From Auanema rhodensis (taxonomy: Eukaryota > Animalia > Nematoda): a DNA stretch of 64,000 nucleotides. This document shows positions 1-64,000 of this stretch, piece by piece (the first letter of the stretch is position 1; each line of letters opens with the position of its first letter). The notes beneath the pieces were generated by a model that was not told the DNA's origin, did not search any database, and saw only the letters and a program-made list of their open reading frames with translations. The stretch covers positions 13,516,001 through 13,580,000 of the forward strand of contig OZ059900.1 of NCBI GenBank assembly GCA_964057225.1. The letters run 5' to 3'. The position numbers were made by a program, and so were the translations under genes.

Positions 1-20
1 ATTATAGTTTGACCGGATAA

Positions 21-50
21 AGCTTTGTATAGCTTTGTATAGCTTTGTAC
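21..50 (+). repeat. 10-bp minisatellite (AGCTTTGTAY) x3 in long units, x2 in short units
   Basis: agctttgtat agctttgtat agctttgtac at 21-50. There are only two copies in, for example, the units starting at 3202, 4356 and 6965. Confidence 0.97.
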
Positions 51-72
51 ACTGATCACATATACGGCGATA
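51..72 (+). promoter_or_regulatory. Candidate proximal sequence element (snRNA-type Pol II promoter), about -57 to -36
   Basis: Positional inference only. ACTGATCACATATACGGCGATA lies where nematode snRNA/SL upstream elements are expected, and its distance to +1 is constant in long and short units. Confidence 0.4.
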
Positions 73-107
73 GGCTAGAACAGTTCATAAGTTTCCTGAA
101 TAGATTT

Positions 108-129
108 GGTTTAATTACCCAAGTTAGAG
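108..129 (+). other. 22-nt spliced-leader mini-exon, SL1 variant with U19A
   Basis: GGTTTAATTACCCAAGTTAGAG versus canonical nematode SL1 GGTTTAATTACCCAAGTTTGAG: one mismatch at leader nt 19 (position 126). It ends in AG and is followed directly by GT. Confidence 0.95.
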
Positions 130-135
130 GTAGTA
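130..135 (+). promoter_or_regulatory. Trans-splice donor site (GAG/GTAGTA)
   Basis: GT directly follows the 22-nt leader and is paired in stem I with TTACC, as in SL1 RNAs. Confidence 0.9.
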
Positions 136-172
136 TCTCAATCTAACCAGAGAACTTCTGAGTTGGAAATAC

Positions 173-179
173 ATTTTGG
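173..179 (+). promoter_or_regulatory. Sm-protein binding site AUUUUGG of the SL RNA
   Basis: Single-stranded AU4GG between stem-loops II and III. It matches the nematode SL Sm site AAUUUUGG except for a preceding C. Confidence 0.88.
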
Positions 180-258
180 AAAGCACACCACGAGTGTGCA
201 ATATTGAAAACTGTCTGTCTTCGTATGATTATATGACACTATAGATGCCAAAGCAAAA

Positions 259-279
259 CAAATTTGAATATGAACATGA
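259..279 (+). repeat. Degenerate 6-bp repeat (TGAAyw) x3.5 in the spacer
   Basis: The consensus unit reads TGAATT TGAATA TGAACA TGA (e.g. 550-570). Copy 1 carries a variant first hexamer. Confidence 0.6.
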
Positions 280-398
280 CGCGTCTTTTACATTATAGTT
301 TGACCGGATAAAGCTTTGTATAGCTTTGTATAGCTTTGTACACTGATCACATATACGGCGATAGGCTAGAACAGTTCATAAGTTTCCTGAATAGATTT

Positions 399-491
399 GG
401 TTTAATTACCCAAGTTAGAGGTAGTATCTCAATCTAACCAGAGAACTTCTGAGTTGGAAATACATTTTGGAAAGCACACCACGAGTGTGCA
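399..491 (+). ncRNA. SL1: SL1-like RNA gene, copy 2
   Basis: Identical RNA region to copy 1, shifted by 291 bp. Confidence 0.92.
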
Positions 492-689
492 ATATTGAAA
501 ACTGTCTGTCTTAGTATGATTATATAACACTACCGATGCTAAAGCAAAATGAATTTGAATATGAACATGACGCGTCTTTTACATTATAGTTTGACCGGAT
601 AAAGCTTTGTATAGCTTTGTATAGCTTTGTACACTGATCACATATACGGCGATAGGCTAGAACAGTTCATAAGTTTCCTGAATAGATTT

Positions 690-782
690 GGTTTAATTAC
701 CCAAGTTAGAGGTAGTATCTCAATCTAACCAGAGAACTTCTGAGTTGGAAATACATTTTGGAAAGCACACCACGAGTGTGCA
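690..782 (+). ncRNA. SL1: SL1-like RNA gene, copy 3
   Basis: Identical RNA region to copy 1, shifted by 582 bp. Confidence 0.92.
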
Positions 783-3298
783 ATATTGAAAACTGTCTGT
801 CTTAGTATGATTATATAACACTATAGATGCCAAAGCAAAATGAATTTGAATATGAACATGACGCGTCTTTTACATTATAGTTTGACCGGATAAAGCTTTG
901 TATAGCTTTGTATAGCTTTGTACACTGATCACATATACGGCGATAGGCTAGAACAGTTCATAAGTTTCCTGAATAGATTTGGTTTAATTACCCAAGTTAG
1001 AGGTAGTATCTCAATCTAACCAGAGAACTTCTGAGTTGGAAATACATTTTGGAAAGCACACCACGAGTGTGCAATATTGAAAACTGTCTGTCTTAGTATG
1101 ATTATATAACACTATAGATGCCAAAGCAAAATGAATTTGAATATGAACATGACGCGTCTTTTACATTATAGTTTGACCGGATAAAGCTTTGTATAGCTTT
1201 GTATAGCTTTGTACACTGATCACATATACGGCGATAGGCTAGAACAGTTCATAAGTTTCCTGAATAGATTTGGTTTAATTACCCAAGTTAGAGGTAGTAT
1301 CTCAATCTAACCAGAGAACTTCTGAGTTGGAAATACATTTTGGAAAGCACACCACGAGTGTGCAATATTGAAAACTGTCTGTCTTAGTATGATTATATAA
1401 CACTATAGATGCCAAAGCAAAATGAATTTGAATATGAACATGACGCGTCTTTTACATTATAGTTTGACCGGATAAAGCTTTGTATAGCTTTGTATAGCTT
1501 TGTACACTGATCACATATACGGCGATAGGCTAGAACAGTTCATAAGTTTCCTGAATAGATTTGGTTTAATTACCCAAGTTAGAGGTAGTATCTCAATCTA
1601 ACCAGAGAACTTCTGAGTTGGAAATACATTTTGAAAAGCACACCACGAGTGTGCAATATTGAAAACTGTCTGTCTTAGTATGATTATATAACACTACCGA
1701 TGCTAAAGCAAAATGAATTTGAATATGAACATGACGCGTCTTTTACATTATAGTTTGACCGGATAAAGCTTTGTATAGCTTTGTATAGCTTTGTACACTG
1801 ATCACATATACGGCGATAGGCTAGAACAGTTCATAAGTTTCCTGAATAGATTTGGTTTAATTACCCAAGTTAGAGGTAGTATCTCAATCTAACCAGAGAA
1901 CTTCTGAGTTGGAAATACATTTTGGAAAGCACACCACGAGTGTGCAATATTGAAAACTGTCTGTCTTAGTATGATTATATAACACTATAGATGCCAAAGC
2001 AAAATGAATTTGAATATGAACATGACGCGTCTTTTACATTATAGTTTGACCGGATAAAGCTTTGTATAGCATTGTATAGCTTTGTACACTGATCACATAT
2101 ACGGCGATAGGCTAGAACAGTTCATAAGTTTCCTGAATAGATTTGGTTTAATTACCCAAGTTAGAGGTAGTATCTCAATCTAACCAGAGAACTTCTGAGT
2201 TGGAAATACATTTTGAAAAGCACACCACGAGTGTGCAATATTGAAAACTGTCTGTCTTAGTATGATTATATAACACTACCGATGCTAAAGCAAAATGAAT
2301 TTGAATATGAACATGACGCGTCTTTTACATTATAGTTTGACCGGATAAAGCTTTGTATAGCTTTGTATAGCTTTGTACACTGATCACATATACGGCGATA
2401 GGCTAGAACAGTTCATAAGTTTCCTGAATAGATTTGGTTTAATTACCCAAGTTAGAGGTAGTATCTCAATCTAACCAGAGAACTTCTGAGTTGGAAATAC
2501 ATTTTGGAAAGCACACCACGAGTGTGCAATATTGAAAACTGTCTGTCTTAGTATGATTATATAACACTACCGATGCTAAAGCAAAATGAATTTGAATATG
2601 AACATGACGCGTCTTTTACATTATAGTTTGACCGGATAAAGCTTTGTATAGCTTTGTATAGCTTTGTACACTGATCACATATACGGCGATAGGCTAGAAC
2701 AGTTCATAAGTTTCCTGAATAGATTTGGTTTAATTACCCAAGTTAGAGGTAGTATCTCAATCTAACCAGAGAACTTCTGAGTTGGAAATACATTTTGGAA
2801 AGCACACCACGAGTGTGCAATATTGAAAACTGTCTGTCTTAGTATGATTATATAACACTACCGATGCTAAAGCAAAATGAATTTGAATATGAACATGACG
2901 CGTCTTTTACATTATAGTTTGACCGGATAAAGCTTTGTATAGCTTTGTATAGCTTTGTACACTGATCACATATACGGCGATAGGCTAGAACAGTTCATAA
3001 GTTTCCTGAATAGATTTGGTTTAATTACCCAAGTTAGAGGTAGTATCTCAATCTAACCAGAGAACTTCTGAGTTGGAAATACATTTTGGAAAGCACACCA
3101 CGAGTGTGCAATATTGAAAACTGTCTGTCTTAGTATGATTATATAACACTATAGATGCCAAAGCAAAATGAATTTGAATATGAACATGACGCGTCTTTTA
3201 CATTATAGTTTGACCGGATAAAGCTTTGTATAGCTTTGTACACTGATCACATATACGGCGATAGGCTAGAACAGTTCATAAGTTTCCTGAATAGATTT

Positions 3299-3391
3299 GG
3301 TTTAATTACCCAAGTTAGAGGTAGTATCTCAATCTAACCAGAGAACTTCTGAGTTGGAAATACATTTTGGAAAGCACACCACGAGTGTGCA
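3299..3391 (+). ncRNA. SL1: SL1-like RNA gene, copy 12 (first 281-bp unit)
   Basis: Intact RNA region; the upstream minisatellite has two copies. Confidence 0.92.
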
Positions 3392-6300
3392 ATATTGAAA
3401 ACTGTCTGTCTTAGTATGATTATATAACACTATAGATGCCAAAGCAAAATGAATTTGAATATGAACATGACGCGTCTTTTACATTATAGTTTGACCGGAT
3501 AAAGCTTTGTATAGCTTTGTATAGCTTTGTACACTGATCACATATACGGCGATAGGCTAGAACAGTTCATAAGTTTCCTGAATAGATTTGGTTTAATTAC
3601 CCAAGTTAGAGGTAGTATCTCAATCTAACCAGAGAACTTCTGAGTTGGAAATACATTTTGGAAAGCACACCACGAGTGTGCAATATTGAAAACTGTCTGT
3701 CTTAGTATGATTATATAACACTATAGATGCCAAAGCAAAATGAATTTGAATATGAACATGACGCGTCTTTTACATTATAGTTTGACCGGATAAAGCTTTG
3801 TATAGCTTTGTATAGCTTTGTACACTGATCACATATACGGCGATAGGCTAGAACAGTTCATAAGTTTCCTGAATAGATTTGGTTTAATTACCCAAGTTAG
3901 AGGTAGTATCTCAATCTAACCAGAGAACTTCTGAGTTGGAAATACATTTTGGAAAGCACACCACGAGTGTGCAATATTGAAAACTGTCTGTCTTAGTATG
4001 ATTATATAACACTATAGATGCCAAAGCAAAATGAATTTGAATATGAACATGACGCGTCTTTTACATTATAGTTTGACCGGATAAAGCTTTGTATAGCTTT
4101 GTATAGCTTTGTACACTGATCACATATACGGCGATAGGCTAGAACAGTTCATAAGTTTCCTGAATAGATTTGGTTTAATTACCCAAGTTAGAGGTAGTAT
4201 CTCAATCTAACCAGAGAACTTCTGAGTTGGAAATACATTTTGGAAAGCACACCACGAGTGTGCAATATTGAAAACTGTCTGTCTTAGTATGATTATATAA
4301 CACTACCGATGCTAAAGCAAAATGAATTTGAATATGAACATGACGCGTCTTTTACATTATAGTTTGACCGGATAAAGCTTTGTATAGCTTTGTACACTGA
4401 TCACATATACGGCGATAGGCTAGAACAGTTCATAAGTTTCCTGAATAGATTTGGTTTAATTACCCAAGTTAGAGGTAGTATCTCAATCTAACCAGAGAAC
4501 TTCTGAGTTGGAAATACATTTTGGAAAGCACACCACGAGTGTGCAATATTGAAAACTGTCTGTCTTAGTATGATTATATAACACTATAGATGCCAAAGCA
4601 AAATGAATTTGAATATGAACATGACGCGTCTTTTACATTATAGTTTGACCGGATAAAGCTTTGTATAGCATTGTATAGCTTTGTACACTGATCACATATA
4701 CGGCGATAGGCTAGAACAGTTCATAAGTTTCCTGAATAGATTTGGTTTAATTACCCAAGTTAGAGGTAGTATCTCAATCTAACCAGAGAACTTCTGAGTT
4801 GGAAATACATTTTGAAAAGCACACCACGAGTGTGCAATATTGAAAACTGTCTGTCTTAGTATGATTATATAACACTACCGATGCTAAAGCAAAATGAATT
4901 TGAATATGAACATGACGCGTCTTTTACATTATAGTTTGACCGGATAAAGCTTTGTATAGCTTTGTATAGCTTTGTACACTGATCACATATACGGCGATAG
5001 GCTAGAACAGTTCATAAGTTTCCTGAATAGATTTGGTTTAATTACCCAAGTTAGAGGTAGTATCTCAATCTAACCAGAGAACTTCTGAGTTGGAAATACA
5101 TTTTGGAAAGCACACCACGAGTGTGCAATATTGAAAACTGTCTGTCTTAGTATGATTATATAACACTACCGATGCTAAAGCAAAATGAATTTGAATATGA
5201 ACATGACGCGTCTTTTACATTATAGTTTGACCGGATAAAGCTTTGTATAGCTTTGTATAGCTTTGTACACTGATCACATATACGGCGATAGGCTAGAACA
5301 GTTCATAAGTTTCCTTAATAGATTTGGTTTAATTACCCAAGTTAGAGGTAGTATCTCAATCTAACCAGAGAACTTCTGAGTTGGAAATACATTTTGGAAA
5401 GCACACCACGAGTGTGCAATATTGAAAACTGTCTGTCTTAGTATGATTATATAACACTACCGATGCTAAAGCAAAATGAATTTGAATATGAACATGACGC
5501 GTCTTTTACATTATAGTTTGACCGGATAAAGCTTTGTATAGCTTTGTATAGCTTTGTACACTGATCACATATACGGCGATAGGCTAGAACAGTTCATAAG
5601 TTTCCTGAATAGATTTGGTTTAATTACCCAAGTTAGAGGTAGTATCTCAATCTAACCAGAGAACTTCTGAGTTGGAAATACATTTTGGAAAGCACACCAC
5701 GAGTGTGCAATATTGAAAACTGTCTGTCTTAGTATGATTATATAACACTATAGATGCCAAAGCAAAATGAATTTGAATATGAACATGACGCGTCTTTTAC
5801 ATTATAGTTTGACCGGATAAAGCTTTGTATAGCTTTGTATAGCTTTGTACACTGATCACATATACGGCGATAGGCTAGAACAGTTCATAAGTTTCCTGAA
5901 TAGATTTGGTTTAATTACCCAAGTTAGAGGTAGTATCTCAATCTAACCAGAGAACTTCTGAGTTGGAAATACATTTTGGAAAGCACACCACGAGTGTGCA
6001 ATATTGAAAACTGTCTGTCTTAGTATGATTATATAACACTATAGATGCCAAAGCAAAATGAATTTGAATATGAACATGACGCGTCTTTTACATTATAGTT
6101 TGACCGGATAAAGCTTTGTATAGCTTTGTATAGCTTTGTACACTGATCACATATACGGCGATAGGCTAGAACAGTTCATAAGTTTCCTGAATAGATTTGG
6201 TTTAATTACCCAAGTTAGAGGTAGTATCTCAATCTAACCAGAGAACTTCTGAGTTGGAAATACATTTTGGAAAGCACACCACGAGTGTGCAATATTGAAA

Positions 6301-9300
6301 ACTGTCTGTCTTAGTATGATTATATAACACTATAGATGCCAAAGCAAAATGAATTTGAATATGAACATGACGCGTCTTTTACATTATAGTTTGACCGGAT
6401 AAAGCTTTGTATAGCTTTGTATAGCTTTGTACACTGATCACATATACGGCGATAGGCTAGAACAGTTCATAAGTTTCCTGAATAGATTTGGTTTAATTAC
6501 CCAAGTTAGAGGTAGTATCTCAATCTAACCAGAGAACTTCTGAGTTGGAAATACATTTTGGAAAGCACACCACGAGTGTGCAATATTGAAAACTGTCTGT
6601 CTTAGTATGATTATATAACACTATAGATGCCAAAGCAAAATGAATTTGAATATGAACATGACGCGTCTTTTACATTATAGTTTGACCGGATAAAGCTTTG
6701 TATAGCTTTGTATAGCTTTGTACACTGATCACATATACGGCGATAGGCTAGAACAGTTCATAAGTTTCCTGAATAGATTTGGTTTAATTACCCAAGTTAG
6801 AGGTAGTATCTCAATCTAACCAGAGAACTTCTGAGTTGGAAATACATTTTGGAAAGCACACCACGAGTGTGCAATATTGAAAACTGTCTGTCTTAGTATG
6901 ATTATATAACACTATAGATGCCAAAGCAAAATGAATTTGAATATGAACATGACGCGTCTTTTACATTATAGTTTGACCGGATAAAGCTTTGTATAGCTTT
7001 GTACACTGATCACATATACGGCGATAGGCTAGAACAGTTCATAAGTTTCCTGAATAGATTTGGTTTAATTACCCAAGTTAGAGGTAGTATCTCAATCTAA
7101 CCAGAGAACTTCTGAGTTGGAAATACATTTTGGAAAGCACACCACGAGTGTGCAATATTGAAAACTGTCTGTCTTAGTATGATTATATAACACTATAGAT
7201 GCCAAAGCAAAATGAATTTGAATATGAACATGACGCGTCTTTTACATTATAGTTTGACCGGATAAAGCTTTGTATAGCTTTGTACACTGATCACATATAC
7301 GGCGATAGGCTAGAACAGTTCATAAGTTTCCTGAATAGATTTGGTTTAATTACCCAAGTTAGAGGTAGTATCTCAATCTAACCAGAGAACTTCTGAGTTG
7401 GAAATACATTTTGGAAAGCACACCACGAGTGTGCAATATTGAAAACTGTCTGTCTTAGTATGATTATATAACACTATAGATGCCAAAGCAAAATGAATTT
7501 GAATATGAACATGACGCGTCTTTTACATTATAGTTTGACCGGATAAAGCTTTGTATAGCTTTGTATAGCTTTGTACACTGATCACATATACGGCGATAGG
7601 CTAGAACAGTTCATAAGTTTCCTGAATAGATTTGGTTTAATTACCCAAGTTAGAGGTAGTATCTCAATCTAACCAGAGAACTTCTGAGTTGGAAATACAT
7701 TTTGGAAAGCACACCACGAGTGTGCAATATTGAAAACTGTCTGTCTTAGTATGATTATATAACACTACCGATGCTAAAGCAAAATGAATTTGAATATGAA
7801 CATGACGCGTCTTTTACATTATAGTTTGACCGGATAAAGCTTTGTATAGCTTTGTACACTGATCACATATACGGCGATAGGCTAGAACAGTTCATAAGTT
7901 TCCTGAATAGATTTGGTTTAATTACCCAAGTTAGAGGTAGTATCTCAATCTAACCAGAGAACTTCTGAGTTGGAAATACATTTTGGAAAGCACACCACGA
8001 GTGTGCAATATTGAAAACTGTCTGTCTTAGTATGATTATATAACACTATAGATGCCAAAGCAAAATGAATTTGAATATGAACATGACGCGTCTTTTACAT
8101 TATAGTTTGACCGGATAAAGCTTTGTATAGCTTTGTATAGCTTTGTACACTGATCACATATACGGCGATAGGCTAGAACAGTTCATAAGTTTCCTTAATA
8201 GATTTGGTTTAATTACCCAAGTTAGAGGTAGTATCTCAATCTAACCAGAGAACTTCTGAGTTGGAAATACATTTTGGAAAGCACACCACGAGTGTGCAAT
8301 ATTGAAAACTGTCTGTCTTAGTATGATTATATAACACTACCGATGCTAAAGCAAAATGAATTTGAATAGGAAAATGACGCGTCTTTTACATTATAGTTTG
8401 ACCGGATAAAGCTTTGTATAGCTTTGTATAGCTTTGTACACTGATCACATATACGGCGATAGGCTAGAACAGTTCATAAGTTTCCTGAATAGATTTGGTT
8501 TAATTACCCAAGTTAGAGGTAGTATCTCAATCTAACCAGAGAACTTCTGAGTTGGAAATACATTTTGGAAAGCACACCACGAGTGTGCAATATTGAAAAC
8601 TGTCTGTCTTAGTATGATTATATAACACTACCGATGCTAAAGCAAAATGAATTTGAATATGAACATGACGCGTCTTTTACATTATAGTTTGACCGGATAA
8701 AGCTTTGTATAGCTTTGTACACTGATCACATATACGGCGATAGGCTAGAACAGTTCATAAGTTTCCTGAATAGATTTGGTTTAATTACCCAAGTTAGAGG
8801 TAGTATCTCAATCTAACCAGAGAACTTCTGAGTTGGAAATACATTTTGGAAAGCACACCACGAGTGTGCAATATTGAAAACTGTCTGTCTTAGTATGATT
8901 ATATAACACTATAGATGCCAAAGCAAAATGAATTTGAATATGAACATGACGCGTCTTTTACATTATAGTTTGACCGGATAAAGCTTTGTATAGCTTTGTA
9001 TAGCTTTGTACACTGATCACATATACGGCGATAGGCTAGAACAGTTCATAAGTTTCCTGAATAGATTTGGTTTAATTACCCAAGTTAGAGGTAGTATCTC
9101 AATCTAACCAGAGAACTTCTGAGTTGGAAATACATTTTGGAAAGCACACCACGAGTGTGCAATATTGAAAACTGTCTGTCTTAGTATGATTATATAACAC
9201 TACCGATGCTAAAGCAAAATGAATTTGAATATGAACATGACGCGTCTTTTACATTATAGTTTGACCGGATAAAGCTTTGTATAGCTTTGTACACTGATCA

Positions 9301-12300
9301 CATATACGGCGATAGGCTAGAACAGTTCATAAGTTTCCTGAATAGATTTGGTTTAATTACCCAAGTTAGAGGTAGTATCTCAATCTAACCAGAGAACTTC
9401 TGAGTTGGAAATACATTTTGGAAAGCACACCACGAGTGTGCAATATTGAAAACTGTCTGTCTTAGTATGATTATATAACACTATAGATGCCAAAGCAAAA
9501 TGAATTTGAATATGAACATGACGCGTCTTTTACATTATAGTTTGACCGGATAAAGCTTTGTATAGCTTTGTATAGCTTTGTACACTGATCACATATACGG
9601 CGATAGGCTAGAACAGTTCATAAGTTTCCTTAATAGATTTGGTTTAATTACCCAAGTTAGAGGTAGTATCTCAATCTAACCAGAGAACTTCTGAGTTGGA
9701 AATACATTTTGGAAAGCACACCACGAGTGTGCAATATTGAAAACTGTCTGTCTTAGTATGATTATATAACACTACCGATGCTAAAGCAAAATGAATTTGA
9801 ATAGGAAAATGACGCGTCTTTTACATTATAGTTTGACCGGATAAAGCTTTGTATAGCTTTGTATAGCTTTGTACACTGATCACATATACGGCGATAGGCT
9901 AGAACAGTTCATAAGTTTCCTGAATAGATTTGGTTTAATTACCCAAGTTAGAGGTAGTATCTCAATCTAACCAGAGAACTTCTGAGTTGGAAATACATTT
10001 TGGAAAGCACACCACGAGTGTGCAATATTGAAAACTGTCTGTCTTAGTATGATTATATAACACTACCGATGCTAAAGCAAAATGAATTTGAATATGAACA
10101 TGACGCGTCTTTTACATTATAGTTTGACCGGATAAAGCTTTGTATAGCTTTGTACACTGATCACATATACGGCGATAGGCTAGAACAGTTCATAAGTTTC
10201 CTGAATAGATTTGGTTTAATTACCCAAGTTAGAGGTAGTATCTCAATCTAACCAGAGAACTTCTGAGTTGGAAATACATTTTGGAAAGCACACCACGAGT
10301 GTGCAATATTGAAAACTGTCTGTCTTAGTATGATTATATAACACTATAGATGCCAAAGCAAAATGAATTTGAATATGAACATGACGCGTCTTTTACATTA
10401 TAGTTTGACCGGATAAAGCTTTGTATAGCTTTGTATAGCTTTGTACACTGATCACATATACGGCGATAGGCTAGAACAGTTCATAAGTTTCCTGAATAGA
10501 TTTGGTTTAATTACCCAAGTTAGAGGTAGTATCTCAATCTAACCAGAGAACTTCTGAGTTGGAAATACATTTTGGAAAGCACACCACGAGTGTGCAATAT
10601 TGAAAACTGTCTGTCTTAGTATGATTATATAACACTACCGATGCTAAAGCAAAATGAATTTGAATATGAACATGACGCGTCTTTTACATTATAGTTTGAC
10701 CGGATAAAGCTTTGTATAGCTTTGTACACTGATCACATATACGGCGATAGGCTAGAACAGTTCATAAGTTTCCTGAATAGATTTGGTTTAATTACCCAAG
10801 TTAGAGGTAGTATCTCAATCTAACCAGAGAACTTCTGAGTTGGAAATACATTTTGGAAAGCACACCACGAGTGTGCAATATTGAAAACTGTCTGTCTTAG
10901 TATGATTATATAACACTATAGATGCCAAAGCAAAATGAATTTGAATATGAACATGACGCGTCTTTTACATTATAGTTTGACCGGATAAAGCTTTGTATAG
11001 CTTTGTATAGCTTTGTACACTGATCACATATACGGCGATAGGCTAGAACAGTTTATAAGTTTCCTGAATAGATTTGGTTTAATTACCCAAGTTAGAGGTA
11101 GTATCTCAATCTAACCAGAGAACTTCTGAGTTGGAAATACATTTTGGAAAGCACACCACGAGTGTGCAATATTGAAAACTGTCTGTCTTAGTATGATTAT
11201 ATAACACTACCGATGCTAAAGCAAAATGAATTCGAATATGAACATGACGCGTCTTTTACATTATAGTTTGACCGGATAAAGCTTTGTATAGCTTTGTATA
11301 GCTTTGTACACTGATCACATATACGGCGATAGGCTAGAACAGTTCATAAGTTTCCTGAATAGATTTGGTTTAATTACCCAAGTTAGAGGTAGTATCTCAA
11401 TCTAACCAGAGAACTTCTGAGTTGGAAATACATTTTGGAAAGCACACCACGAGTGTGCAATATTGAAAACTGTCTGTCTTAGTATGATTATATAACACTA
11501 CCGATGCTAAAGCAAAATGAATTTGAATATGAACATGACGCGTCTTTTACATTATAGTTTGACCGGATAAAGCTTTGTATAGCTTTGTACACTGATCACA
11601 TATACGGCGATAGGCTAGAACAGTTCATAAGTTTCCTGAATAGATTTGGTTTAATTACCCAAGTTAGAGGTAGTATCTCAATCTAACCAGAGAACTTCTG
11701 AGTTGGAAATACATTTTGGAAAGCACACCACGAGTGTGCAATATTGAAAACTGTCTGTCTTAGTATGATTATATAACACTATAGATGCCAAAGCAAAATG
11801 AATTTGAATATGAACATGACGCGTCTTTTACATTATAGTTTGACCGGATAAAGCTTTGTATAGCTTTGTATAGCTTTGTACACTGATCACATATACGGCG
11901 ATAGGCTAGAACAGTTCATAAGTTTCCTTAATAGATTTGGTTTAATTACCCAAGTTAGAGGTAGTATCTCAATCTAACCAGAGAACTTCTGAGTTGGAAA
12001 TACATTTTGGAAAGCACACCACGAGTGTGCAATATTGAAAACTGTCTGTCTTAGTATGATTATATAACACTACCGATGCTAAAGCAAAATGAATTTGAAT
12101 AGGAAAATGACGCGTCTTTTACATTATAGTTTGACCGGATAAAGCTTTGTATAGCTTTGTATAGCTTTGTACACTGATCACATATACGGCGATAGGCTAG
12201 AACAGTTCATAAGTTTCCTGAATAGATTTGGTTTAATTACCCAAGTTAGAGGTAGTATCTCAATCTAACCAGAGAACTTCTGAGTTGGAAATACATTTTG

Positions 12301-53000: not shown

Positions 53001-55700
53001 GTTTGACCGGATAAAGCTTTGTATAGCTTTGTATAGCTTTGTACACTGATCACATATGCGGCGATAGGCTAGAACAGTTCATAAGTTTCCTGAATAGATT
53101 TGGTTTAATTACCCAAGTTAGAGGTAGTATCTCAATCTAACCAGAGAACTTCTGAGTTGGAAATACATTTTTGAAAGCACACCACGAGTGTGCAATATTG
53201 AAAACTGTCTGTCTTAGTATGATTATATAACACTATAGATGCCAAAGCAAAATGAATTTGAATATGAACATGACGCGTCTTTTACATTATAGTTTGACCG
53301 GATAAAGCTTTGTATAGCTTTGTATAGCTTTGTACACTGATCACATATACGGCGATAGGCTAGAACAGTTCATAAGTTTCCTGAATAGATTTGGTTTAAT
53401 TACCCAAGTTAGAGGTAGTATCTCAATCTAACCAGAGAACTTCTGAGTTGGAAATACATTTTGGAAAGCACACCACGAGTGTGCAATATTGAAAACTGTC
53501 TGTCTTAGTATGATTATATAACACTACCGATGCTAAAGCAAAATGAATTTGAATATGAACATGACGCGTCTTTTACATTATAGTTTGATCGGATAAAGCT
53601 TTGTATAGCTTTGTACACTGATCACATATACGGCGATAGGCTAGAACAGTTCATAAGTTTCCTGAATAGATTTGGTTTAATTACCTAAGTTAGAGGTAGT
53701 ATCTCAATCTAACCAGAGAACTTCTGAGTTGGAAATACATTTTGGAAAGCACACCACGAGTGTGCAATATTGAAAACTGTTTGTCTTAGTATGATTATAT
53801 GACACTATAGATGCCAAAGCAAAACAAATTTGAATATGAACATGACGCGTCTTTTACATTATAGTTTGATCGGATAAAGCTTTGTATAGCTTTGTACACT
53901 GATCACATATACGGCGATAGGCTAGAACAGTTCATAAGTTTCCTGAATAGATTTGGTTTAATTACCCAAGTTAGAGGTAGTATCTCAATCTAACCAGAGA
54001 ACTTCTGAGTTGGAAATACATTTTGGAAAGCACACCACGAGTGTGCAATATTGAAAACTGTTTGTCTTAGTATGATTATATGACACTATAGATGCCAAAG
54101 CAAAACAAATTTGAATATGAACATGACGCGTCTTTTACATTATAGTTTGACCGGATAAAGCTTTGTATAGCTTTGTATAGCTTTGTACACTGATCACATA
54201 TACGGCGATAGGCTAGAACAGTTCATAAGTTTCCTGAATAGATTTGGTTTAATTACCCAAGTTAGAGGTAGTATCTCAATCTAACCAGAGAACTTCTGAG
54301 TTGGAAATACATTTTTGAAAGCACACCACGAGTGTGCAATATTGAAAACTGTCTGTCTTAGTATGATTATATAACACTACTGATGCTAAAGCAAAATGAA
54401 TTTGAATATGAACATGACGCGTCTTTTACATTATAGTTTGACCGGATAAAGCTTTGTATAGCTTTGTATAGCTTTGTACACTGATCACATATACGGCGAT
54501 AGGCTAGAACAGTTCATAAGTTTCCTGAATAGATTTGGTTTAATTACCCAAGTTAGAGGTAGTATCTCAATCTAACCAGAGAACTTCTGAGTTGAAAATA
54601 CATTTTGGAAAGCACACCACGAGTGTGCAATATTGAAAACTGTCTGTCTTAGTATGATTATATAACACTACCGATGCTAAAGCAAAATGAATTTGAATAT
54701 GAACATGACGCGTCTTTTACATTATAGTTTGACCGGATAAAGCTTTGTATAGCTTTGTATAGCTTTGTACACTGATCACATATACGGCGATAGGCTAGAA
54801 CAGTTCATAAGTTTCCTTAATAGATTTGGTTTAATTACCCAAGTTAGAGGTAGTATCTCAATCTAACCAGAGAACTTCTGAGTTGGAAATACATTTTGGA
54901 AAGCACACCACGAGTGTGCAATTTTGAAAACTGTCTGTCTTAGTATGATTATATAACACTACCGATGCTAAAGCAAAATGAATTTGAATATGAACATGAC
55001 GCGTCTTTTACATTATAGTTTGATCGGATAAAGCTTTGTATAGCTTTGTATAGCTTTGTACACTGATCACATATACGGCGATAGGCTAGAACAGTTCATA
55101 AGTTTCCTGAATAGATTTGGTTTAATTACCCAAGTTAGAGGTAGTATCTCAATCTAACCAGAGAACTTCTGAGTTGGAAATACATTTTGGAAAGCACACC
55201 ACGAGTGTGCAATATTGAAAACTGTCTGTCTTAGTATGATTATATAACACTATAGATGCCAAAGCAAAATGAATTTGAATATGAACATGACGCGTCTTTT
55301 ACATTATAGTTTGACCGGATAAAGCTTTGTATAGCTTTGTATAGCTTTGTACACTGATCACATATACGGCGATAGGCTAGAACAGTTCATAAGTTTCCTG
55401 AATAGATTTGGTTTAATTACCCAAGTTAGAGGTAGTATCTCAATCTAACCAGAGAACTTCTGAGTTGGAAATACATTTTGGAAAGCACACCACGAGTGTG
55501 CAATATTGAAAACTGTCTGTCTTAGTATGATTATATAACACTACCGATGCTAAAGCAAAATGAATTTGAATATGAACATGACGCGTCTTTTACATTATAG
55601 TTTGACCGGATAAAGCTTTGTATAGCTTTGTATAGCTTTGTACACTGATCACATATACGGCGAGAGGCTAGAACAGTTTATAAGTTTCCTGAATAAACTT

Positions 55701-55793
55701 GGTTTAATTACCCAAGTTAGAGGTAGTATCTCAATCCAACCAGAGAACTTCTGAGTTGGAAATACATTTTGGAAAGCACACCATGAGTGTGCA
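55701..55793 (+). ncRNA. SL1-like RNA subtype copy 194 (stem II CCAAC, loop III CATGA)
   Basis: T>C at 55737, C>T at 55784, upstream AATAAACTT instead of AATAGATTT. Confidence 0.85.
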
Positions 55794-58570
55794 ATATTGA
55801 AAATTGTCTGTCTTAGTATGATTATATGACACTATAGATGCCAAAGCAAAACAAATTTGAATATGAACATGACGCGTCTTTTACATTATAGTTTGACCGG
55901 ATAAAGCTTTGTATAGCTTTGTATAGCTTTGTACACTGATCACATATACGGCGATAGGCTAGAACAGTTCATAAGTTTCCTGAATAGATTTGGTTTAATT
56001 ACCCAAGTTAGAGGTAGTATCTCAATCTAACCAGAGAACTTCTGAGTTGGAAATACATTTTGGAAAGCACACCACGAGTGTGCAATATTGAAAACTGTCT
56101 GTCTTAGTATGATTATATAACACTACCGATGCTAAAGCAAAATGAATTTGAATATGAACATGACGCGTCTTTTACATTATAGTTTGACCGGATAAAGCTT
56201 TGTATAGCTTTGTATAGCTTTGTACACTGATCACATATACGGCGATAGGCTAGAACAGTTCATAAGTTTCCTGAATAGATTTGGTTTAATTACCCAAGTT
56301 AGAGGTAGTATCTCAATCTAACCAGAGAACTTCTGAGTTGGAAATACATTTTGGAAAGCACACCACGAGTGTGCAATATTGAAAACTGTCTGTCTTAGTA
56401 TGATTATATAACACTACCGATGCTAAAGCAAAATGAATTTGAATATGAACATGACGCGTCTTTTACATTATAGTTTGACCGGATAAAGCTTTGTATAGCT
56501 TTGTACACTGATCACATATACGGCGAGAGGCTAGAACAGTTTATAAGTTTCCTGAATAGATTTGGTTTAATTACCCAAGTTAGAGGTAGTATCTCAATCT
56601 AACCAGAGAACTTCTGAGTTGGAAATACATTTTGGAAAGCACACCACGAGTGTGCAATATTGAAAATTGTCTGTCTTAGTATGATTATATGACACTATAG
56701 ATGCCAAAGCAAAACAAATTTGAATATGAACATGACGCGTCTTTTACATTATAGTTTGACCGGATAAAGCTTTGTATTGCTTTGTATAGCTTTGTACACT
56801 GATCACATATACGGCGATAGGCTAGAACAGTTTATAAGTTTCCTGAATAGATTTGGTTTAATTACCCAAGTTAGAGGTAGTATCTCAATCTAACCAGAGA
56901 ACTTCTGAGTTGGAAATACATTTTGAAAAGCACACCACGAGTGTGCAATATTGAAAACTGTCTGTCTTAGTATGATTATATAACACTACCGATGCTAAAG
57001 CAAAATGAATTTGAATATGAACATGACGCGTCTTTTACATTATAGTTTGACCGGATAAAGCTTTGTATAGCTTTGTACACTGATCACATATACGGCGAGA
57101 GGCTAGAACAGTTTATAAGTTTCCTGAATAGATTTGGTTTAATTACCCAAGTTAGAGGTAGTATCTCAATCTAACCAGAGAACTTCTGAGTTGGAAATAC
57201 ATTTTGGAAAGCACACCACGAGTATGCAATATTGAAAACTGTCTGTCTTAGTATGATTATATAACACTATAGATGCCAAAGCAAAATGAATTTGAATATG
57301 AACATGACGCGTCTTTTACATTATAGTTTGACCGGATAAAGCTTTGTATAGCTTTGTATAGCTTTGTACACTGATCACATATACGGCGATAGGCTAGAAC
57401 AGTTCATAAGTTTCCTGAATAGATTTGGTTTAATTACCCAAGTTAGAGGTAGTATCTCAATCTAACCAGAGAACTTCTGAGTTGGAAATACATTTTGGAA
57501 AGCACACCACGAGTGTGCAATATTGAAAACTGTCTGTCTTAGTATGATTATATAACACTACCGATGCTAAAGCAAAATGAATTTGAATATGAACATGACG
57601 CGTCTTTTACATTATAGTTTGACCGGATAAAGCTTTGTATAGCTTTGTACACTGATCACATATACGGCGATAGGCTAGAACAGTTCATAAGTTTCCTGAA
57701 TAGATTTGGTTTAATTACCTAAGTTAGAGGTAGTATCTCAATCTAACCAGAGAACTTCTGAGTTGGAAATACATTTTGGAAAGCACACCACGAGTGTGCA
57801 ATATTGAAAACTGTCTGTCTTAGTATGATTATATAACACTACCGATGCTAAAGCAAAATGAATTTGAATATGAACATGACGCGTCTTTTACATTATAGTT
57901 TGACCGGATAAAGCTTTGTATAGCTTTGTATAGCTTTGTACACTGATCACATATACGGCGATAGGCTAGAACAGTTCATAAGTTTCCTGAATAGATTTGG
58001 TTTAATTACCCAAGTTAGAGGTAGTATCTCAATCTAACCAGAGAACTTCTGAGTTGGAAATACATTTTGGAAAGCACACCACGAGTGTGCAATATTGAAA
58101 ACTGTCTGTCTTAGTATGATTATATAACACTACAGATGCTAAAGCAAAATGAATTTGAATATGAACATGACGCGTCTTTTACATTATAGTTTGACCGGAT
58201 AAAGCTTTGTATAGCTTTGTACACTGATCACATATACGGCGAGAGGCTAGAACAGTTTATAAGTTTCCTGAATAGATTTGGTTTAATTACCCAAGTTAGA
58301 GGTAGTATCTCAATCTAACCAGAGAACTTCTGAGTTGGAAATACATTTTGGAAAGCACACCACGAGTGTGCAATATTGAAAACTGTCTGTCTTAGTATGA
58401 TTATATAACACTACAGATGCTAAAGCAAAATGAATTTGAATATGAACATGACGCGTCTTTTACATTATAGTTTGACCGGATAAAGCTTTGTATAGCTTTG
58501 TATAGCTTTGTACACTGATCACATATACGGCGAGAGGCTAGAACAGTTTATAAGTTTCCTGAATAAACTT

Positions 58571-58663
58571 GGTTTAATTACCCAAGTTAGAGGTAGTATC
58601 TCAATCCAACCAGAGAACTTCTGAGTTGGAAATACATTTTGGAAAGCACACCATGAGTGTGCA
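58571..58663 (+). ncRNA. SL1-like RNA subtype copy 204 (same haplotype as copy 194)
   Basis: T>C at 58607, C>T at 58654, upstream AATAAACTT. Confidence 0.85.
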
Positions 58664-61600
58664 ATATTGAAAATTGTCTGTCTTAGTATGATTATATGAC
58701 ACTATAGATGCCAAAGCAAAACAAATTTGAATATGAACATGACGCGTCTTTTACATTATAGTTTGACCGGATAAAGCTTTGTATAGCTTTGTATAGCTTT
58801 GTACACTGATCACATATACGGCGATAGGCTAGAACAGTTCATAAGTTTCCTGAATAGATTTGGTTTAATTACCCAAGTTAGAGGTAGTATCTCAATCTAA
58901 CCAGAGAACTTCTGAGTTGGAAATACATTTTGGAAAGCACACCACGAGTGTGCAATATTGAAAACTGTCTGTCTTAGTATGATTATATAACACTACCGAT
59001 GCTAAAGCAAAATGAATTTGAATATGAACATGACGCGTCTTTTACATTATAGTTTGACCGGATAAAGCTTTGTATAGCTTTGTATAGCTTTGTACACTGA
59101 TCACATATACGGCGATAGGCTAGAACAGTTCATAAGTTTCCTGAATAGATTTGGTTTAATTACCCAAGTTAGAGGTAGTATCTCAATCTAACCAGAGAAC
59201 TTCTGAGTTGGAAATACATTTTGGAAAGCACACCACGAGTGTGCAATATTGAAAACTGTCTGTCTTAGTATGATTATATAACACTACCGATGCTAAAGCA
59301 AAATGAATTTGAATATGAACATGACGCGTCTTTTACATTATAGTTTGACCGGATAAAGCTTTGTATAGCTTTGTACACTGATCACATATACGGCGAGAGG
59401 CTAGAACAGTTTATAAGTTTCCTGAATAGATTTGGTTTAATTACCCAAGTTAGAGGTAGTATCTCAATCTAACCAGAGAACTTCTGAGTTGGAAATACAT
59501 TTTGGAAAGCACACCACGAGTGTGCAATATTGAAAACTGTCTGTCTTAGTATGATTATATAACACTACCGATGCTAAAGCAAAATGAATTTGAATATGAA
59601 CATGACGCGTCTTTTACATTATAGTTTGACCGGATAAAGCTTTGTATAGCTTTGTACACTGATCACATATACGGCGAGAGGCTAGAACAGTTTATAAGTT
59701 TCCTGAATAGATTTGGTTTAATTACCCAAGTTAGAGGTAGTATCTCAATCTAACCAGAGAACTTCTGAGTTGGAAATACATTTTGGAAAGCACACCACGA
59801 GTGTGCAATATTGAAAATTGTCTGTCTTAGTATGATTATATGACACTATAGATGCCAAAGCAAAACAAATTTGAATATGAACATGACGCGTCTTTTACAT
59901 TATAGTTTGACCGGATAAAGCTTTGTATTGCTTTGTATAGCTTTGTACACTGATCACATATACGGCGAAAGGCTAGAACAGTTTATAAGTTTCCTGAATA
60001 GATTTGGTTTAATTACCCAAGTTAGAGGTAGTATCTCAATCTAACCAGAGAACTTCTGAGTTGGAAATACATTTTGAAAAGCACACCACGAGTGTGCAAT
60101 ATTGAAAACTGTCTGTCTTAGTATGATTATATAACACTACCGATGCTAAAGCAAAATGAATTTGAATATGAACATGACGCGTCTTTTACATTATAGTTTG
60201 ACCGGATAAAGCTTTGTATAGCTTTGTACACTGATCACATATACGGCGAGAGGCTAGAACAGTTTATAAGTTTCCTGAATAGATTTGGTTTAATTACCCA
60301 AGTTAGAGGTAGTATCTCAATCTAACCAGAGAACTTCTGAGTTGGAAATACATTTTGGAAAGCACACCACGAGTGTGCAATATTGAAAACTGTCTGTCTT
60401 AGTATGATTATATAACACTACAGATGCTAAAGCAAAATGAATTTGAATATGAACATGACGCGTCTTTTACATTATAGTTTGACCGGATAAAGCTTTGTAT
60501 AGCTTTGTACACTGATCACATATACGGCGAGAGGCTAGAACAGTTTATAAGTTTCCTGAATAAACTTGGTTTAATTACCCAAGTTAGAGGTAGTATCTCA
60601 ATATAACCAGAGAACTTCTGAGTTGGAAATACATTTTGGAAAGCACACCATGAGTGTGCAATATTGAAAATTGTCTGTCTTAGTATGATTATATGACACT
60701 ATAGATGCCAAAGCAAAACAAATTTGAATATGAACATGACGCGTCTTTTACATTATAGTTTGAACGGATAAAGCTTTGTATAGCTTTGTACCCTGATCAC
60801 TTATACGGCGATAGGCTAGAACAGTTCATAAGTTTCCTGAATAGATTTGGTTTAATTACCCAAGTTAGAGGTAGTATCTCAATCTAACCAGAGAACTTCT
60901 GAGTTGGAAATACATTTTGGAAAGCACACCACGAGTGTGCAATATTGAAAACTGTCTGTCTTAGTATGATTATATAACACTACCGATGCTAAAGCAAAAT
61001 GAATTTGAATATGAACATGACGCGTCTTTTACATTATAGTTTGACCGGATAAAGCTTTGTATAGTTTTGTATAGCTTTGTACACTGATCACATATACGGC
61101 GATAGGCTAGAACAGTTCATAAGTTTCCTGAATAGATTTGGTTTAATTACCCAAGTTAGAGGTAGTATCTCAATCTAACCAGAGAACTTCTGAGTTGGAA
61201 ATACATTTTGGAAAGCACACCACGAGTGTGCAATATTGAAAACTGTCTGTCTTAGTATGATTATATAACACTACCGATGCTAAAGCAAAATGAATTTGAA
61301 TATGAACATGACGCGTCTTTTACATTATAGTTTGACCGGATAAAGCTTTGTATAGCTTTGTATAGCTTTGTACACTGATCACATATACGGCGATAGGCTA
61401 GAACAGTTCATAAGTTTCCTGAATAGATTTGGTTTAATTACCCAAGTTAGAGGTAGTATCTCAATCTAACCAGAGAACTTCTGAGTTGGAAATACATTTT
61501 GGAAAGCACACCACGAGTGTGCAATATTGAAAACTGTCTGTCTTAGTATGATTATATAACACTACCGATGCTAAAGCAAAATGAATTTGAATATGAACAT

Positions 61601-62283
61601 GACGCGTCTTTTACATTATAGTTTGACCGGATAAAGCTTTGTATAGCTTTGTACACTGATCACATATACGGCGAGAGGCTAGAACAGTTTATAAGTTTCC
61701 TGAATAGATTTGGTTTAATTACCCAAGTTAGAGGTAGTATCTCAATCTAACCAGAGAACTTCTGAGTTGGAAATACATTTTGGAAAGCACACCACGAGTG
61801 TGCAATATTGAAAATTGTCTGTCTTAGTATGATTATATGACACTATAGATGCCAAAGCAAAACAAATTTGAATATGAACATGACGCGTCTTTTACATTAT
61901 AGTTTGACCGGATAAAGCTTTGTATTGCTTTGTATAGCTTTGTACACTGATCACATATACGGCGATAGGCTAGAACAGTTTATAAGTTTCCTGAATAGAT
62001 TTGGTTTAATTACCCAAGTTAGAGGTAGTATCTCAATCTAACCAGAGAACTTCTGAGTTGGAAATACATTTTGGAAAGCACACCACGAGTGTGCAATATT
62101 GAAAACTGTCTGTCTTAGTATGATTATATAACACTACCGATGCTAAAGCAAAATGAATTTGAATATGAACATGACGCGTCTTTTACATTATAGTTTGATC
62201 GGATAAAGCTTTGTATAGCTTTGTACACTGATCACATATACGGCGATAGGCTAGAACAGTTCATAAGTTTCCTGAATAGATTT

Positions 62284-62376
62284 GGTTTAATTACCCAAGT
62301 GAGAGGTAGTATCTCAATCTAACCAGAGAACTTCTGAGTTGGAAATACATTTTGGAAAGCACACCACGAGTGTGCA
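62284..62376 (+). ncRNA. SL1-like RNA copy 217 with leader T18G
   Basis: Leader reads GGTTTAATTACCCAAGTGAGAG (G at 62301). Confidence 0.8.
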
Positions 62377-63718
62377 ATATTGAAAACTGTCTGTCTTAGT
62401 ATGATTATATAACACTACAGATGCTAAAGCAAAATGAATTTGAATATGAACATGACGCGTATTTTACATTATAGTTTGACCGGATAAAGCTTTGTATAGC
62501 TTTGTACACTGATCACATATACGGCGAGAAGCTAGAACAGTTTATAAGTTTCCTGAATAGATTTGGTTTAATTACCCAAGTTAGAGGTAGTATCTCAATC
62601 TAACCAGAGAACTTCTGAGTTGGAAATACATTTTGGAAAGCACACCATGAGTGTGCAATATTGAAAATTGTCTGTCTTAGTATGATTATATGACACTATA
62701 GATGCCAAAGCAAAACAAATTTGAATATGAACATGACGCGTCTTTTACATTATAGTTTCACCGGATAAAGCTTTGTATAGCTTTGTATAGCTTTGTACAC
62801 TGATCACATATACGGCGATAGGCTAGAACAGTTCATAAGTTTCCTGAATAGATTTGGTTTAATTACCCAAGTTAGAGGTAGTATCTCAATCTAACCAGAG
62901 AACTTCTGAGTTGGAAATACATTTTGGAAAGCACACCACGAGTGTGCAATATTGAAAACTGTCTGTCTTAGTATGATTATATAACACTATAGATGCCAAA
63001 GCAAAATGAATTTGAATATGAACATGACGCGTCTTTTACATTATAGTTTGACCGGATAAAGCTTTGTATAGCTTTGTATAGCTTTGTACACTGATCACAT
63101 ATACGGCGATAGGCTAGAACAGTTCATAAGTTTCCTGAATAGATTTGGTTTAATTACCCAAGTTAGAGGTAGTATCTCAATCTAACCAGAGAACTTCTGA
63201 GTTGGAAATACATTTTGGAAAGCACACCACGAGTGTGCAATATTGAAAACTGTCTGTCTTCGTATGATTATATGACACTATAGATGCCAAAGCAAAACAA
63301 ATTTGAATATGAACATGACGCGTCTTTTACATTATAGTTTGACTGGATAAAGCTTTGTATAGCTTTGTACACTGATCACATATACGGCGATAGGCTAGAA
63401 CAGTTCATAAGTTTCCTGAATAGATTTGGTTTAATTACCCAAGTTAGAGGTAGTATCTCAATCTAACCAGAGAACTTCTGAGTTGGAAATACATTTTGAA
63501 AAGCACACCACGAGTGTGCAATATTGAAAACTGTCTGTCTTAGTATGATTATATAACACTACCGATGCTAAAGCAAAATGAATTTGAATATGAACATGAC
63601 GCGTCTTTTACATTATAGTTTGACCGGATAAAGCTTTGTATAGCTTTGTATAGCTTTGTACACTGATCACATATACGGCGATAGGCTAGAACAGTTCATA
63701 AGTTTCCTTAATAGATTT

Positions 63719-63811
63719 GGTTTAATTACCCAAGTTAGAGGTAGCATCTCAATCTAACCAGAGAACTTCTGAGTTGGAAATACATTTTGGAAAGCACACC
63801 ACGAGTGTGCA
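63719..63811 (+). ncRNA. SL1: SL1-like RNA gene, copy 222 (last complete; donor +5 T>C)
   Basis: Intact leader; GTAGC at 63741-63745; Sm site and stems II/III intact. Confidence 0.88.
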
Positions 63812-64000
63812 ATTTTGAAAACTGTCTGTCTTAGTATGATTATATAACACTACCGATGCTAAAGCAAAATGAATTTGAATATGAACATGACGCGTCTTTT
63901 ACATTATAGTTTGATCGGATAAAGCTTTGTATAGCTTTGTATAGCTTTGTACACTGATCACATATACGGCGATAGGCTAGAACAGTTCATAAGTTTCCTG

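What the first reader, a model, noticed from the sequence alone, without database searches (positions are those of the whole stretch)
1..64000. An apparent satellite is a stand-alone mega-array of at least 222 spliced-leader RNA genes in ultra-compact 291-bp units
Seen: every unit holds a complete SL RNA architecture (22-nt leader, GT donor, three stem-loops, Sm site), with only about 190-200 bp of spacer, over more than 64 kb. Established: SL1 RNA donates its leader to pre-mRNAs in nematode trans-splicing, and in C. elegans the SL1 genes lie in a roughly 1-kb repeat shared with 5S rRNA at about 100 copies. Inference: this is a nematode SL locus with a much shorter unit and a higher copy number. 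Repeat-masking would file it as satellite DNA.
Basis: partly seen in the sequence, partly recalled or inferred. Interest (0 to 1): 0.9.

Follow-up and report, generated by a model that had tools for sequence, protein, structure and literature searches.

The report
Tandem array of variant SL1 genes
The whole 64-kb window is a head-to-tail array of 222 short units, each holding a complete-looking nematode spliced-leader (SL1-type) RNA gene with a one-letter change in the leader; short SL-gene "satellites" like this are already known from root-knot nematodes, so it is a new example, not a new kind.

Summary
Observation confirmed. The window is one uninterrupted, single-strand array with 222 leader starts. 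Of the 221 complete units, 151 are 291 bp and 70 are 281 bp. Each unit has a 22-nt SL1-like leader (U19A), a GT donor, a short stem I, stem II, an AUUUUGG Sm site and stem III. There is no 5S, tRNA or other Rfam family.

The Rfam SL1 hit (36.7 bits) is below the gathering score of 75. However, 24 of 25 scored SL1 hits, at canonical leader + Sm-site genes on soil-metagenome contigs, also fall below it (36.6-63.5 bits). The low score therefore does not refute the reading.

Support for live genes:
- A leader-less profile of environmental SL1 bodies hits the right place.
- An upstream 12-mer at -53 is identical, at the same offset, to one in an unrelated SL1 locus.
- The gene is the least variable part of the unit.

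Not shown: a discrete transcript, or use of the variant leader on mRNAs. About 9% of units have a damaged Sm site.

The "much shorter stand-alone unit" is not new. Meloidogyne MelSat01/INC is a 295-bp SL1-variant gene satellite. Earlier scan notes place this genome as Auanema rhodense (X chromosome, programmed DNA elimination) and list the same family in other windows. I did not test that identity. The 2026 preprint on that genome never mentions SL genes. Interest is moderate.

The parts
1..64000 (+). Head-to-tail array with 222 leader starts, running off both window ends. Of the 221 complete units, 151 are 291 bp and 70 are 281 bp. Multi-unit blocks are duplicated within it.
   Evidence: The string of unit types shows recurring multi-unit motifs, and unit identity peaks at lag 10.
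399..420 (+). 22-nt leader exon GGTTTAATTACCCAAGTTAGAG of a representative unit (SL1 with U19A). It recurs every 291 or 281 bp, first at 108-129.
   Evidence: Exact in 218 of 222 copies. None has the canonical T at position 19.
421..422 (+). GT splice donor immediately after the leader.
   Evidence: All 218 exact copies read GAG|GTAG. The donor lies inside stem I in the canonical fold.
399..493 (+). Predicted SL RNA gene of about 95 nt: stem I (nt 7-12 with 22-27), stem II (nt 35-60), Sm site AUUUUGG (nt 66-72), stem III (nt 76-92).
   Evidence: Rfam SL1 full-length match, model positions 1-103, 36.7 bits. Folds. A leader-less nhmmer profile of 27 environmental SL1 bodies hits 429-477, E 0.0024 per 2.9 kb.
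346..357 (+). Candidate proximal promoter element ATCACATATACG at -53..-42.
   Evidence: Exact in 218 of 221 units. The identical 12-mer sits at the same offset in environmental SL1 locus L060, whose remaining upstream sequence is 28% identical. ATC at -53/-52 occurs in 8 of 24 independent SL1 upstream lineages, against 0.41 expected per position. Columns -73..-42 are the least variable part of the spacer.
316..325 (+). Middle of three AGCTTTGTAT copies (312-340). One copy is missing in the 281-bp units. The indel lies upstream of the -53 element, so promoter-to-gene spacing is unchanged.
492..502 (+). AATATTGAAAA just after stem III: candidate 3'-end formation signal (weak).
   Evidence: The same 11-mer or near-copies follow stem III in the L005 family, L050 and L038. 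A loose pattern matches 11 of 46 distinct downstream regions.

Best explanation
This is an array of SL1-type spliced-leader RNA genes in a nematode. An earlier scan note names the species as Auanema rhodense (X chromosome); I did not test that.

Proposed mechanism:
- Each 281/291-bp unit is a self-contained snRNA-type transcription unit.
- An upstream element at about -53, possibly together with the leader itself, directs RNA polymerase II to start at the first G of the leader.
- The RNA, roughly 95 nt, folds into a short stem I around the splice donor, then stem II, a single-stranded Sm site and stem III. It is bound by Sm proteins.
- It donates its 22-nt leader (GGUUUAAUUACCCAAGUUAGAG) to pre-mRNAs.

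The array grows and is homogenised by unequal exchange of single units and multi-unit blocks.

Shown: the anatomy, the family resemblance of the RNA body, the conserved -53 motif and the lower variability of the gene. Inferred: transcription, capping, Sm binding and use of the variant leader.
For: - The gene matches Rfam SL1 over its full length at every unit.
- The score of 36.7 bits lies inside the 36.6-63.5 range of SL1 genes with canonical leader and Sm site on metagenome contigs.
- A leader-less profile finds the body in register on the right strand.
- The body aligns column for column with the environmental TCTGACCAG...TGTGTTGGA / AATTTTGGAA family.
- Stems II and III are as stable as in those genes and beat shuffles at z about -4.
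- The -53 12-mer is identical to that of L060 at the same offset, amid otherwise random-level similarity. It is exact in 218 of 221 units.
- Diversity pi is 0.0035 in the gene against 0.0189 in the spacer. The gene is the minimum of all 291 circular 95-column windows. Variants carried by at least 11 units: 1 of 95 gene sites against 12 of 186 spacer sites, p = 0.03.
- 187 of 221 genes are identical.
- The unit sequence is held by independent DNA runs from a second study.
- Precedent: a 295-bp SL-gene satellite with a conserved gene and a variable spacer (PMC9673304).
Against: - No discrete transcript is seen. RNA-run contigs span the spacer and the unit junction at depth 2-8, which fits DNA carry-over or read-through. 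Contigs cannot show small non-polyadenylated RNAs well.
- The variant leader was not found in any searchable paper or in metagenome contigs. Its use on mRNAs is unproven.
- 20 of 221 units have a mutated Sm-site GG.
- The number of segregating sites does not differ significantly between gene and spacer (p = 0.10).
- The Sm site has C where R is usual, and stem I is only 6 bp.
- Scan notes (unchecked) say this genome is full of satellites built from 5S fragments, tRNA and U4 genes. Amplification of a small-RNA gene therefore need not mean function.
Confidence: 0.68

Rival explanations
1. SL-gene-derived satellite. An SL1 gene was captured and amplified like other small-RNA genes in this genome, possibly in germline-restricted DNA where selection is weak. 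The copies look intact because amplification and homogenisation are recent, not because they are used. The organism's working SL RNA comes from other loci.
For: The array shows satellite dynamics, with block duplications and 281/291 length classes. Nine percent of units have a broken Sm site, four of them adjacent. No discrete transcript is seen. Unchecked scan notes describe 5S-fragment, permuted-5S, 5S+U4 and tRNA-Asp satellites in the same genome, and a germline-restricted tRNA array 657 kb away. The preprint reports 5S, tRNA and U2 arrays in eliminated DNA.
Against: Unlike the 5S-fragment satellites, the gene here is complete, with its promoter-like element at the canonical offset. The gene is the least variable part of the unit and the common variants lie in the spacer. 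The RNA body has diverged to about 65% identity with any environmental SL1 yet keeps stems II and III and the Sm site, which implies a long history as a working SL RNA. No canonical-leader copy is in the window.
Confidence: 0.22
2. Structural chromosome repeat. The array's main role is as chromosome-specific satellite DNA, for example X-specific pairing or segregation, or heterochromatin and small-RNA production. The SL gene content is incidental.
For: The preprint speculates that chromosome-specific tandem repeats aid homolog recognition and X behaviour (Discussion). Scan notes place several arrays of this family within about 620 kb on one piece, one of them inverted. RNA contigs cover the whole unit at low level.
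Against: Nothing in the sequence points to this. It does not explain the conserved -53 motif or the low variability of the gene. It is also compatible with, not exclusive of, SL RNA production.
Confidence: 0.07
3. Assembly artefact: a few copies inflated into a long array.
For: Long near-identical arrays are hard to assemble, and copy number was not verified here from read depth.
Against: There are 61 distinct unit variants arranged in non-random blocks. Independent runs hold 75-98% of the sampled words. The 291-bp circular junction appears in contigs of other runs.
Confidence: 0.03

Closest known systems
Meloidogyne MelSat01 / INC satellite (= Mi-SL1b gene), 295-bp unit (PMC9673304; Abad et al. 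2008 as cited there)
   Same: Head-to-tail satellite with one SL1-variant gene of about 90 nt per unit. It has no 5S, and the leader differs from canonical SL1 by a single base near the 3' end (...GTTTAAG there, ...GTTAGAG here). The gene and Sm site are more conserved than the spacer. It sits at several chromosomal sites. The unit size is almost the same (295 against 291/281).
   Different: There is no sequence similarity outside the leader and Sm site. The MelSat01 consensus has an AT-rich spacer and a much shorter RNA body. It comes from a different nematode lineage, so the arrangement arose independently. In M. incognita the satellite-borne SL1b is reported as the minor leader in ESTs, with SL1a the most frequent; usage here is unknown.
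C. elegans 5S-SL1 cluster (about 110 copies, 1-kb unit)
   Same: A monomorphic tandem SL1 gene array that supplies the major leader. The RNA architecture is the same.
   Different: That unit is about 1 kb and carries a 5S rRNA gene. This unit is 281/291 bp with no 5S. The leader here has U19A. There are at least 222 copies in this window alone.
SL1 genes of soil nematodes on metagenome contigs (L001-L061)
   Same: Same leader except position 19, same donor, same stem II / Sm / stem III layout. The closest bodies are about 65% identical (L005/L035 family). The -53 ATC(A) element is shared with 8 of 24 lineages.
   Different: All 61 loci have the canonical T19. Repeats, where visible, are 700-1100 bp and usually include 5S, U2, U6 or rDNA. 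None has a unit of about 290 bp.
Compact SL RNA gene arrays outside nematodes (trypanosomatid mini-exon repeats; Ciona repeat of about 264 bp). From my own knowledge, not checked here.
   Same: Hundreds of short tandem units, each a Pol II SL RNA gene.
   Different: Unrelated leaders and RNAs; independent origins.

Membership tests
Nematode SL1 RNA (Rfam RF00198) | 22-nt leader GGUUUAAUUACCCAAGUUUGAG at the 5' end | tested here: inconclusive
   21 of 22 positions match. U19A is fixed in all 222 copies. Single-base SL1 variants are accepted members in Meloidogyne and others (PMC1657053).
Nematode SL1 RNA (Rfam RF00198) | GU splice donor directly after the leader, inside stem I | tested here: met
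   GAG|GUAG in 218 exact copies. Stem I of 6 bp (nt 7-12 with 22-27) encloses the donor in the -23.5 kcal/mol fold. The MFE is an alternative helix that also pairs the donor.
Nematode SL1 RNA (Rfam RF00198) | Sm-binding site (AAUUUUGG) single-stranded between stem-loops II and III | tested here: met
   ACAUUUUGGAA lies between stem II (-9.8) and stem III (-8.8). It has C instead of A one base before AUUUUGG. Twenty of 221 units have the GG mutated.
Nematode SL1 RNA (Rfam RF00198) | Score at or above Rfam's gathering threshold (75 bits) | tested here: not met
   36.7 bits, E 4e-4 per 3 kb; nothing at gathering. The threshold also rejects 24 of 25 scored environmental SL1 hits (36.6-63.5 bits), so it is a poor membership criterion.
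Nematode SL1 RNA (Rfam RF00198) | RNA body homologous to SL1 bodies independent of the leader | tested here: met
   A leader-less nhmmer profile hits 138-186 and its periodic repeats on the + strand, E 0.0024. The MAFFT alignment with 13 environmental bodies is colinear.
Nematode SL1 RNA (Rfam RF00198) | Leader found spliced onto mRNAs; TMG cap; Sm protein binding | not testable with these tools
   The single read-laying run gave only contigs that cover the whole unit. No raw RNA reads were available.
snRNA-type Pol II gene | Proximal sequence element about 50-65 bp upstream | tested here: inconclusive
   ATCACATATACG at -53..-42 is conserved in 218 of 221 units, identical in L060, and of the ATC class found in 8 of 24 lineages. 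It could not be compared with this genome's own U1/U2/U4/U5 genes.
SL-gene satellite of the MelSat01 type | Tandem unit of about 290-295 bp holding one SL gene and no other gene, with the gene more conserved than the spacer | tested here: met
   compared with PMC9673304. Spacer homology to MelSat01 is absent, so this is analogy, not shared descent.
5S-SL1 linked repeat (C. elegans, Ascaris, Brugia type) | 5S rRNA gene in the same repeat unit | tested here: not met
   No 5S at the gathering threshold or at E up to 1. 5S was readily found next to SL1 in the control loci.

The most novel reading that the evidence does not exclude
The arrays may lie in germline-restricted DNA that Auanema rhodense discards from body cells at the 12-cell stage. 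Most of the animal's SL1-type genes, all encoding a variant leader, would then exist only in the germline and very early embryo. That would be either a programmed change in SL gene dosage, or a germline-specific leader distinct from the somatic one.
Probability: 0.15. Interest if true: 0.8.

Novelty: new member of a known kind. Interest (0 to 1): 0.45.

Why it matters
- One of the large "satellites" of this genome would be relabelled as a gene family. The family totals at least about 185 kb if the other scan notes hold.
- If the species is Auanema rhodense, the list of non-coding RNA arrays in its 2026 genome description (5S, tRNA, U2) lacks SL genes. The likely reason is that Rfam's SL1 threshold is too strict, and that point applies to any nematode annotation.
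- A leader variant fixed over hundreds of copies in a rhabditine would be a rare departure from a 22-nt sequence described as largely invariant across the phylum (PMC1657053).
- Whether the arrays are kept or eliminated in the soma bears on what programmed DNA elimination removes.

Tried and rejected
- Literature search for the variant leader as DNA and RNA strings, full 22-mer and 13-mer. No relevant paper.
- Tested whether the window is Meloidogyne MelSat01. Rejected: the consensus differs in leader and spacer.
- Tested the four FISH probes of the Auanema preprint (AT-1, XR-1, XT-1, XT-2) against the unit. No match within 8 edits. The array is therefore none of those four families, and the species could not be confirmed this way. 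The preprint's tables are images and no supplement is held.
- Tried to decode the organism by looking up the two short ORFs of the unit in the gene-position collection. Not on record.
- RNAalifold on a MAFFT alignment of 27 SL1 bodies gave no consensus structure, because stems of different length are misaligned. I folded the segments one by one instead and did not build a covariance model.
- RNA evidence: the single read-laying run returned contigs only, with no discrete transcript and no way to see 22-nt leaders on mRNAs.
- Metagenome scan for the variant leader gave 0 hits.
- tRNA scan gave 0.
Full report
**What is there**

Tandem Repeats Finder reports a single array over the whole window: period 291, 222.3 copies, 97% matches. 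Anchoring on the leader core gives 218 exact and 222 approximate starts. All are on the + strand, spaced 291 bp (151 times) or 281 bp (70 times). The short form lacks one of three AGCTTTGTAT copies at -83..-74 from the next leader.

The array runs off both ends of the window. There are 61 distinct unit sequences. Their order shows recurring multi-unit motifs and a peak of unit identity at lag 10, as expected from unequal exchange of blocks. No tRNA, 5S or other Rfam family is present on either strand.

**The gene**

Each unit starts with GGTTTAATTACCCAAGTTAGAG|GTAG. This is the nematode SL1 leader with A instead of U at position 19, followed by a GT donor. No copy has the canonical base.

Rfam's SL1 model matches full length (model positions 1-103) at every unit, with 36.7 bits and E 4e-4 per 3 kb. 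This is below the gathering score of 75. To judge that number I fetched 61 metagenome contigs carrying GGTTTAATTACCCAAGTTNGAGGT; all have T at N. I then scanned 20 of them with Rfam. Of the 25 SL1 hits on them, which fall at the leader + Sm-site genes listed, the scores are 36.6-63.5 bits and only one (L046, 80.3) passes. The sub-threshold score is therefore normal for real SL1 genes. It also explains why an Infernal-based annotation would call this array a satellite.

**The RNA body**

- A profile built from 27 environmental SL1 bodies without the leader hits the units at 138-186 and every period thereafter, on the + strand, with E 0.0024 per 2.9 kb.
- In a MAFFT alignment with 13 bodies, ours is colinear with the TCTGACCAG...TGTGTTGGA / AATTTTGGAA family. 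The best pairwise identity is about 65%.
- The whole-RNA MFE (-26.3 kcal/mol, z -3.4) pairs the leader's 3' half and the donor with nt 47-59.
- The classical three-stem-loop form lies 2.8 kcal/mol higher. It has a 6-bp stem I around the donor, a 10-bp stem II and a 6-bp stem III.
- Folded alone, stem II (-9.8) and stem III (-8.8) match the environmental medians (-10.1 and -10.6). They beat shuffles at z about -4.
- The Sm site reads ACAUUUUGGAA.

**Signs of a working transcription unit**

- The 12-mer ATCACATATACG sits at -53..-42 in 218 of 221 units.
- The identical 12-mer sits at the same offset upstream of the SL1 gene on contig L060. The rest of that upstream region is 28% identical to ours, which is random level.
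- ATC at -53/-52 occurs in 8 of 24 independent SL1 upstream lineages, against 0.41 expected per position.
- The 10-bp length polymorphism lies upstream of this element, so its distance to the start site is constant.
- After stem III comes AATATTGAAAA, also seen behind several environmental genes. This is a weak candidate for a 3'-end signal.

**Variation within the array**

- Diversity is 0.0035 in the 95-nt gene against 0.0189 in the spacer. The gene is the minimum of all 291 circular windows of that length.
- Variants carried by at least 11 units occupy 1 of 95 gene sites and 12 of 186 spacer sites (p = 0.03).
- The plain count of segregating sites does not differ significantly (p = 0.10).
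- 187 of 221 genes are identical.
- Twenty have a change in the Sm-site GG (G71T 13 times, G72A 7 times) and are probably dead.

**What is not shown**

They cover the whole unit, spacer and unit junction included, at depth 2-8. This fits DNA carry-over or read-through and shows no discrete SL RNA. These contigs carry T at gene nt 84, a minor allele here (5 of 221 units), so they stem mostly from other copies of the family.

I could not test whether mRNAs carry the variant leader. The variant string is absent from all searchable papers and from metagenome contigs.

**Comparison with the known**

The environmental loci show the same habit: SL1 sits next to 5S, U2, U6 or rDNA in repeats of 700-1100 bp.

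A stand-alone short unit is already published, however. Meloidogyne MelSat01/INC is a 295-bp satellite that is the Mi-SL1b gene. Its leader also differs by a single base near the 3' end (...GTTTAAG). Its gene and Sm site are conserved, its spacer is variable, and it shows six FISH sites (PMC9673304). Its sequence is unrelated to ours outside the leader and Sm site, so the two arose independently. P. pacificus SL1 genes are also unlinked from 5S, but they are dispersed.

**Context from earlier scan notes (unchecked by me)**

- The same family fills other windows: 370 kb upstream (on the minus strand), 556 kb upstream (a 39-kb array of 281-bp units) and on another piece (18.5 kb).
- Follow-up agents identified the genome as Auanema rhodense, this piece as the X chromosome, and a germline-restricted tRNA-Asp array next to an elimination break site 657 kb downstream.
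- The genome also has satellites made of 5S fragments, permuted 5S and 5S+U4.
- The 2026 preprint on A. rhodense (10.64898/2026.08.27.747507) reports 5S, tRNA and U2 arrays in eliminated DNA. It used Infernal and never mentions spliced leaders.
- Its four FISH probes do not match this unit.

I could neither confirm the species from this window nor tell whether this array is eliminated or retained.

**Verdict**

The reading as SL1-type genes is well supported by sequence, and function is likely but unproven (0.68). The main rival is an amplified SL-gene-derived satellite that is not used (0.22). The kind is known, and this is a new member with a fixed U19A leader. Its interest depends on two untested points: whether the leader is used, and whether the arrays are germline-restricted.

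Noticed in passing
L003-L050 (20 loci): Rfam's SL1 gathering score (75 bits) rejects 24 of 25 scored SL1 hits, at canonical leader + Sm-site genes on soil-metagenome contigs (36.6-63.5 bits; only L046 passes at 80.3). Annotations made at that threshold will miss SL1 genes.
   Followed up: partly
L017:359-7645: An environmental nematode contig carries a full rDNA unit (28S, 5.8S, 18S on the minus strand) with an SL1 gene at 7548-7645 on the plus strand. Here SL1 is linked to the large rDNA, not to 5S.
   Followed up: no
L006, L008, L015, L034: Mixed small-RNA repeats in soil nematodes: 5S + SL1 + U2, with U6 as well in L006 and L008, all within 2-4 kb.
   Followed up: no
window, units about 112-115 (near 32.4-33.6 kb) and scattered: Twenty units have a substitution in the Sm-site GG (G71T 13 times, four of them adjacent; G72A 7 times). 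These are probably dead copies spread by local duplication.
   Followed up: partly
window 191 (gene nt 84, loop of stem III): Contigs of three putative RNA runs carry T here, an allele held by only 5 of 221 units in this window. They mostly represent other copies of the family elsewhere in the genome.
   Followed up: no
window 108-166 (RNA nt 12-59): The minimum-energy fold is not the classical one. The leader's 3' half plus the donor pair with the 3' strand of stem II (12+4 bp), and the variant A19 pairs with U52. With U19 restored in silico the fold changes. This may be an alternative conformation, or it may be chance.
   Followed up: partly
L011, L018, L020, L022, L041, L049: The leader plus GT is followed by sequence with no Sm site or stems. 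L041 runs into an ATG-started reading frame. These are likely trans-spliced mRNAs in metatranscriptome assemblies, not SL RNA genes.
   Followed up: no
one search run table: Runs labelled as four other organisms (B, C, D, E) hold 23-73% of the sampled 31-mers of this unit. Either the array is nearly identical in sister species, or the same species is filed under several names. The codes could not be resolved.
   Followed up: no
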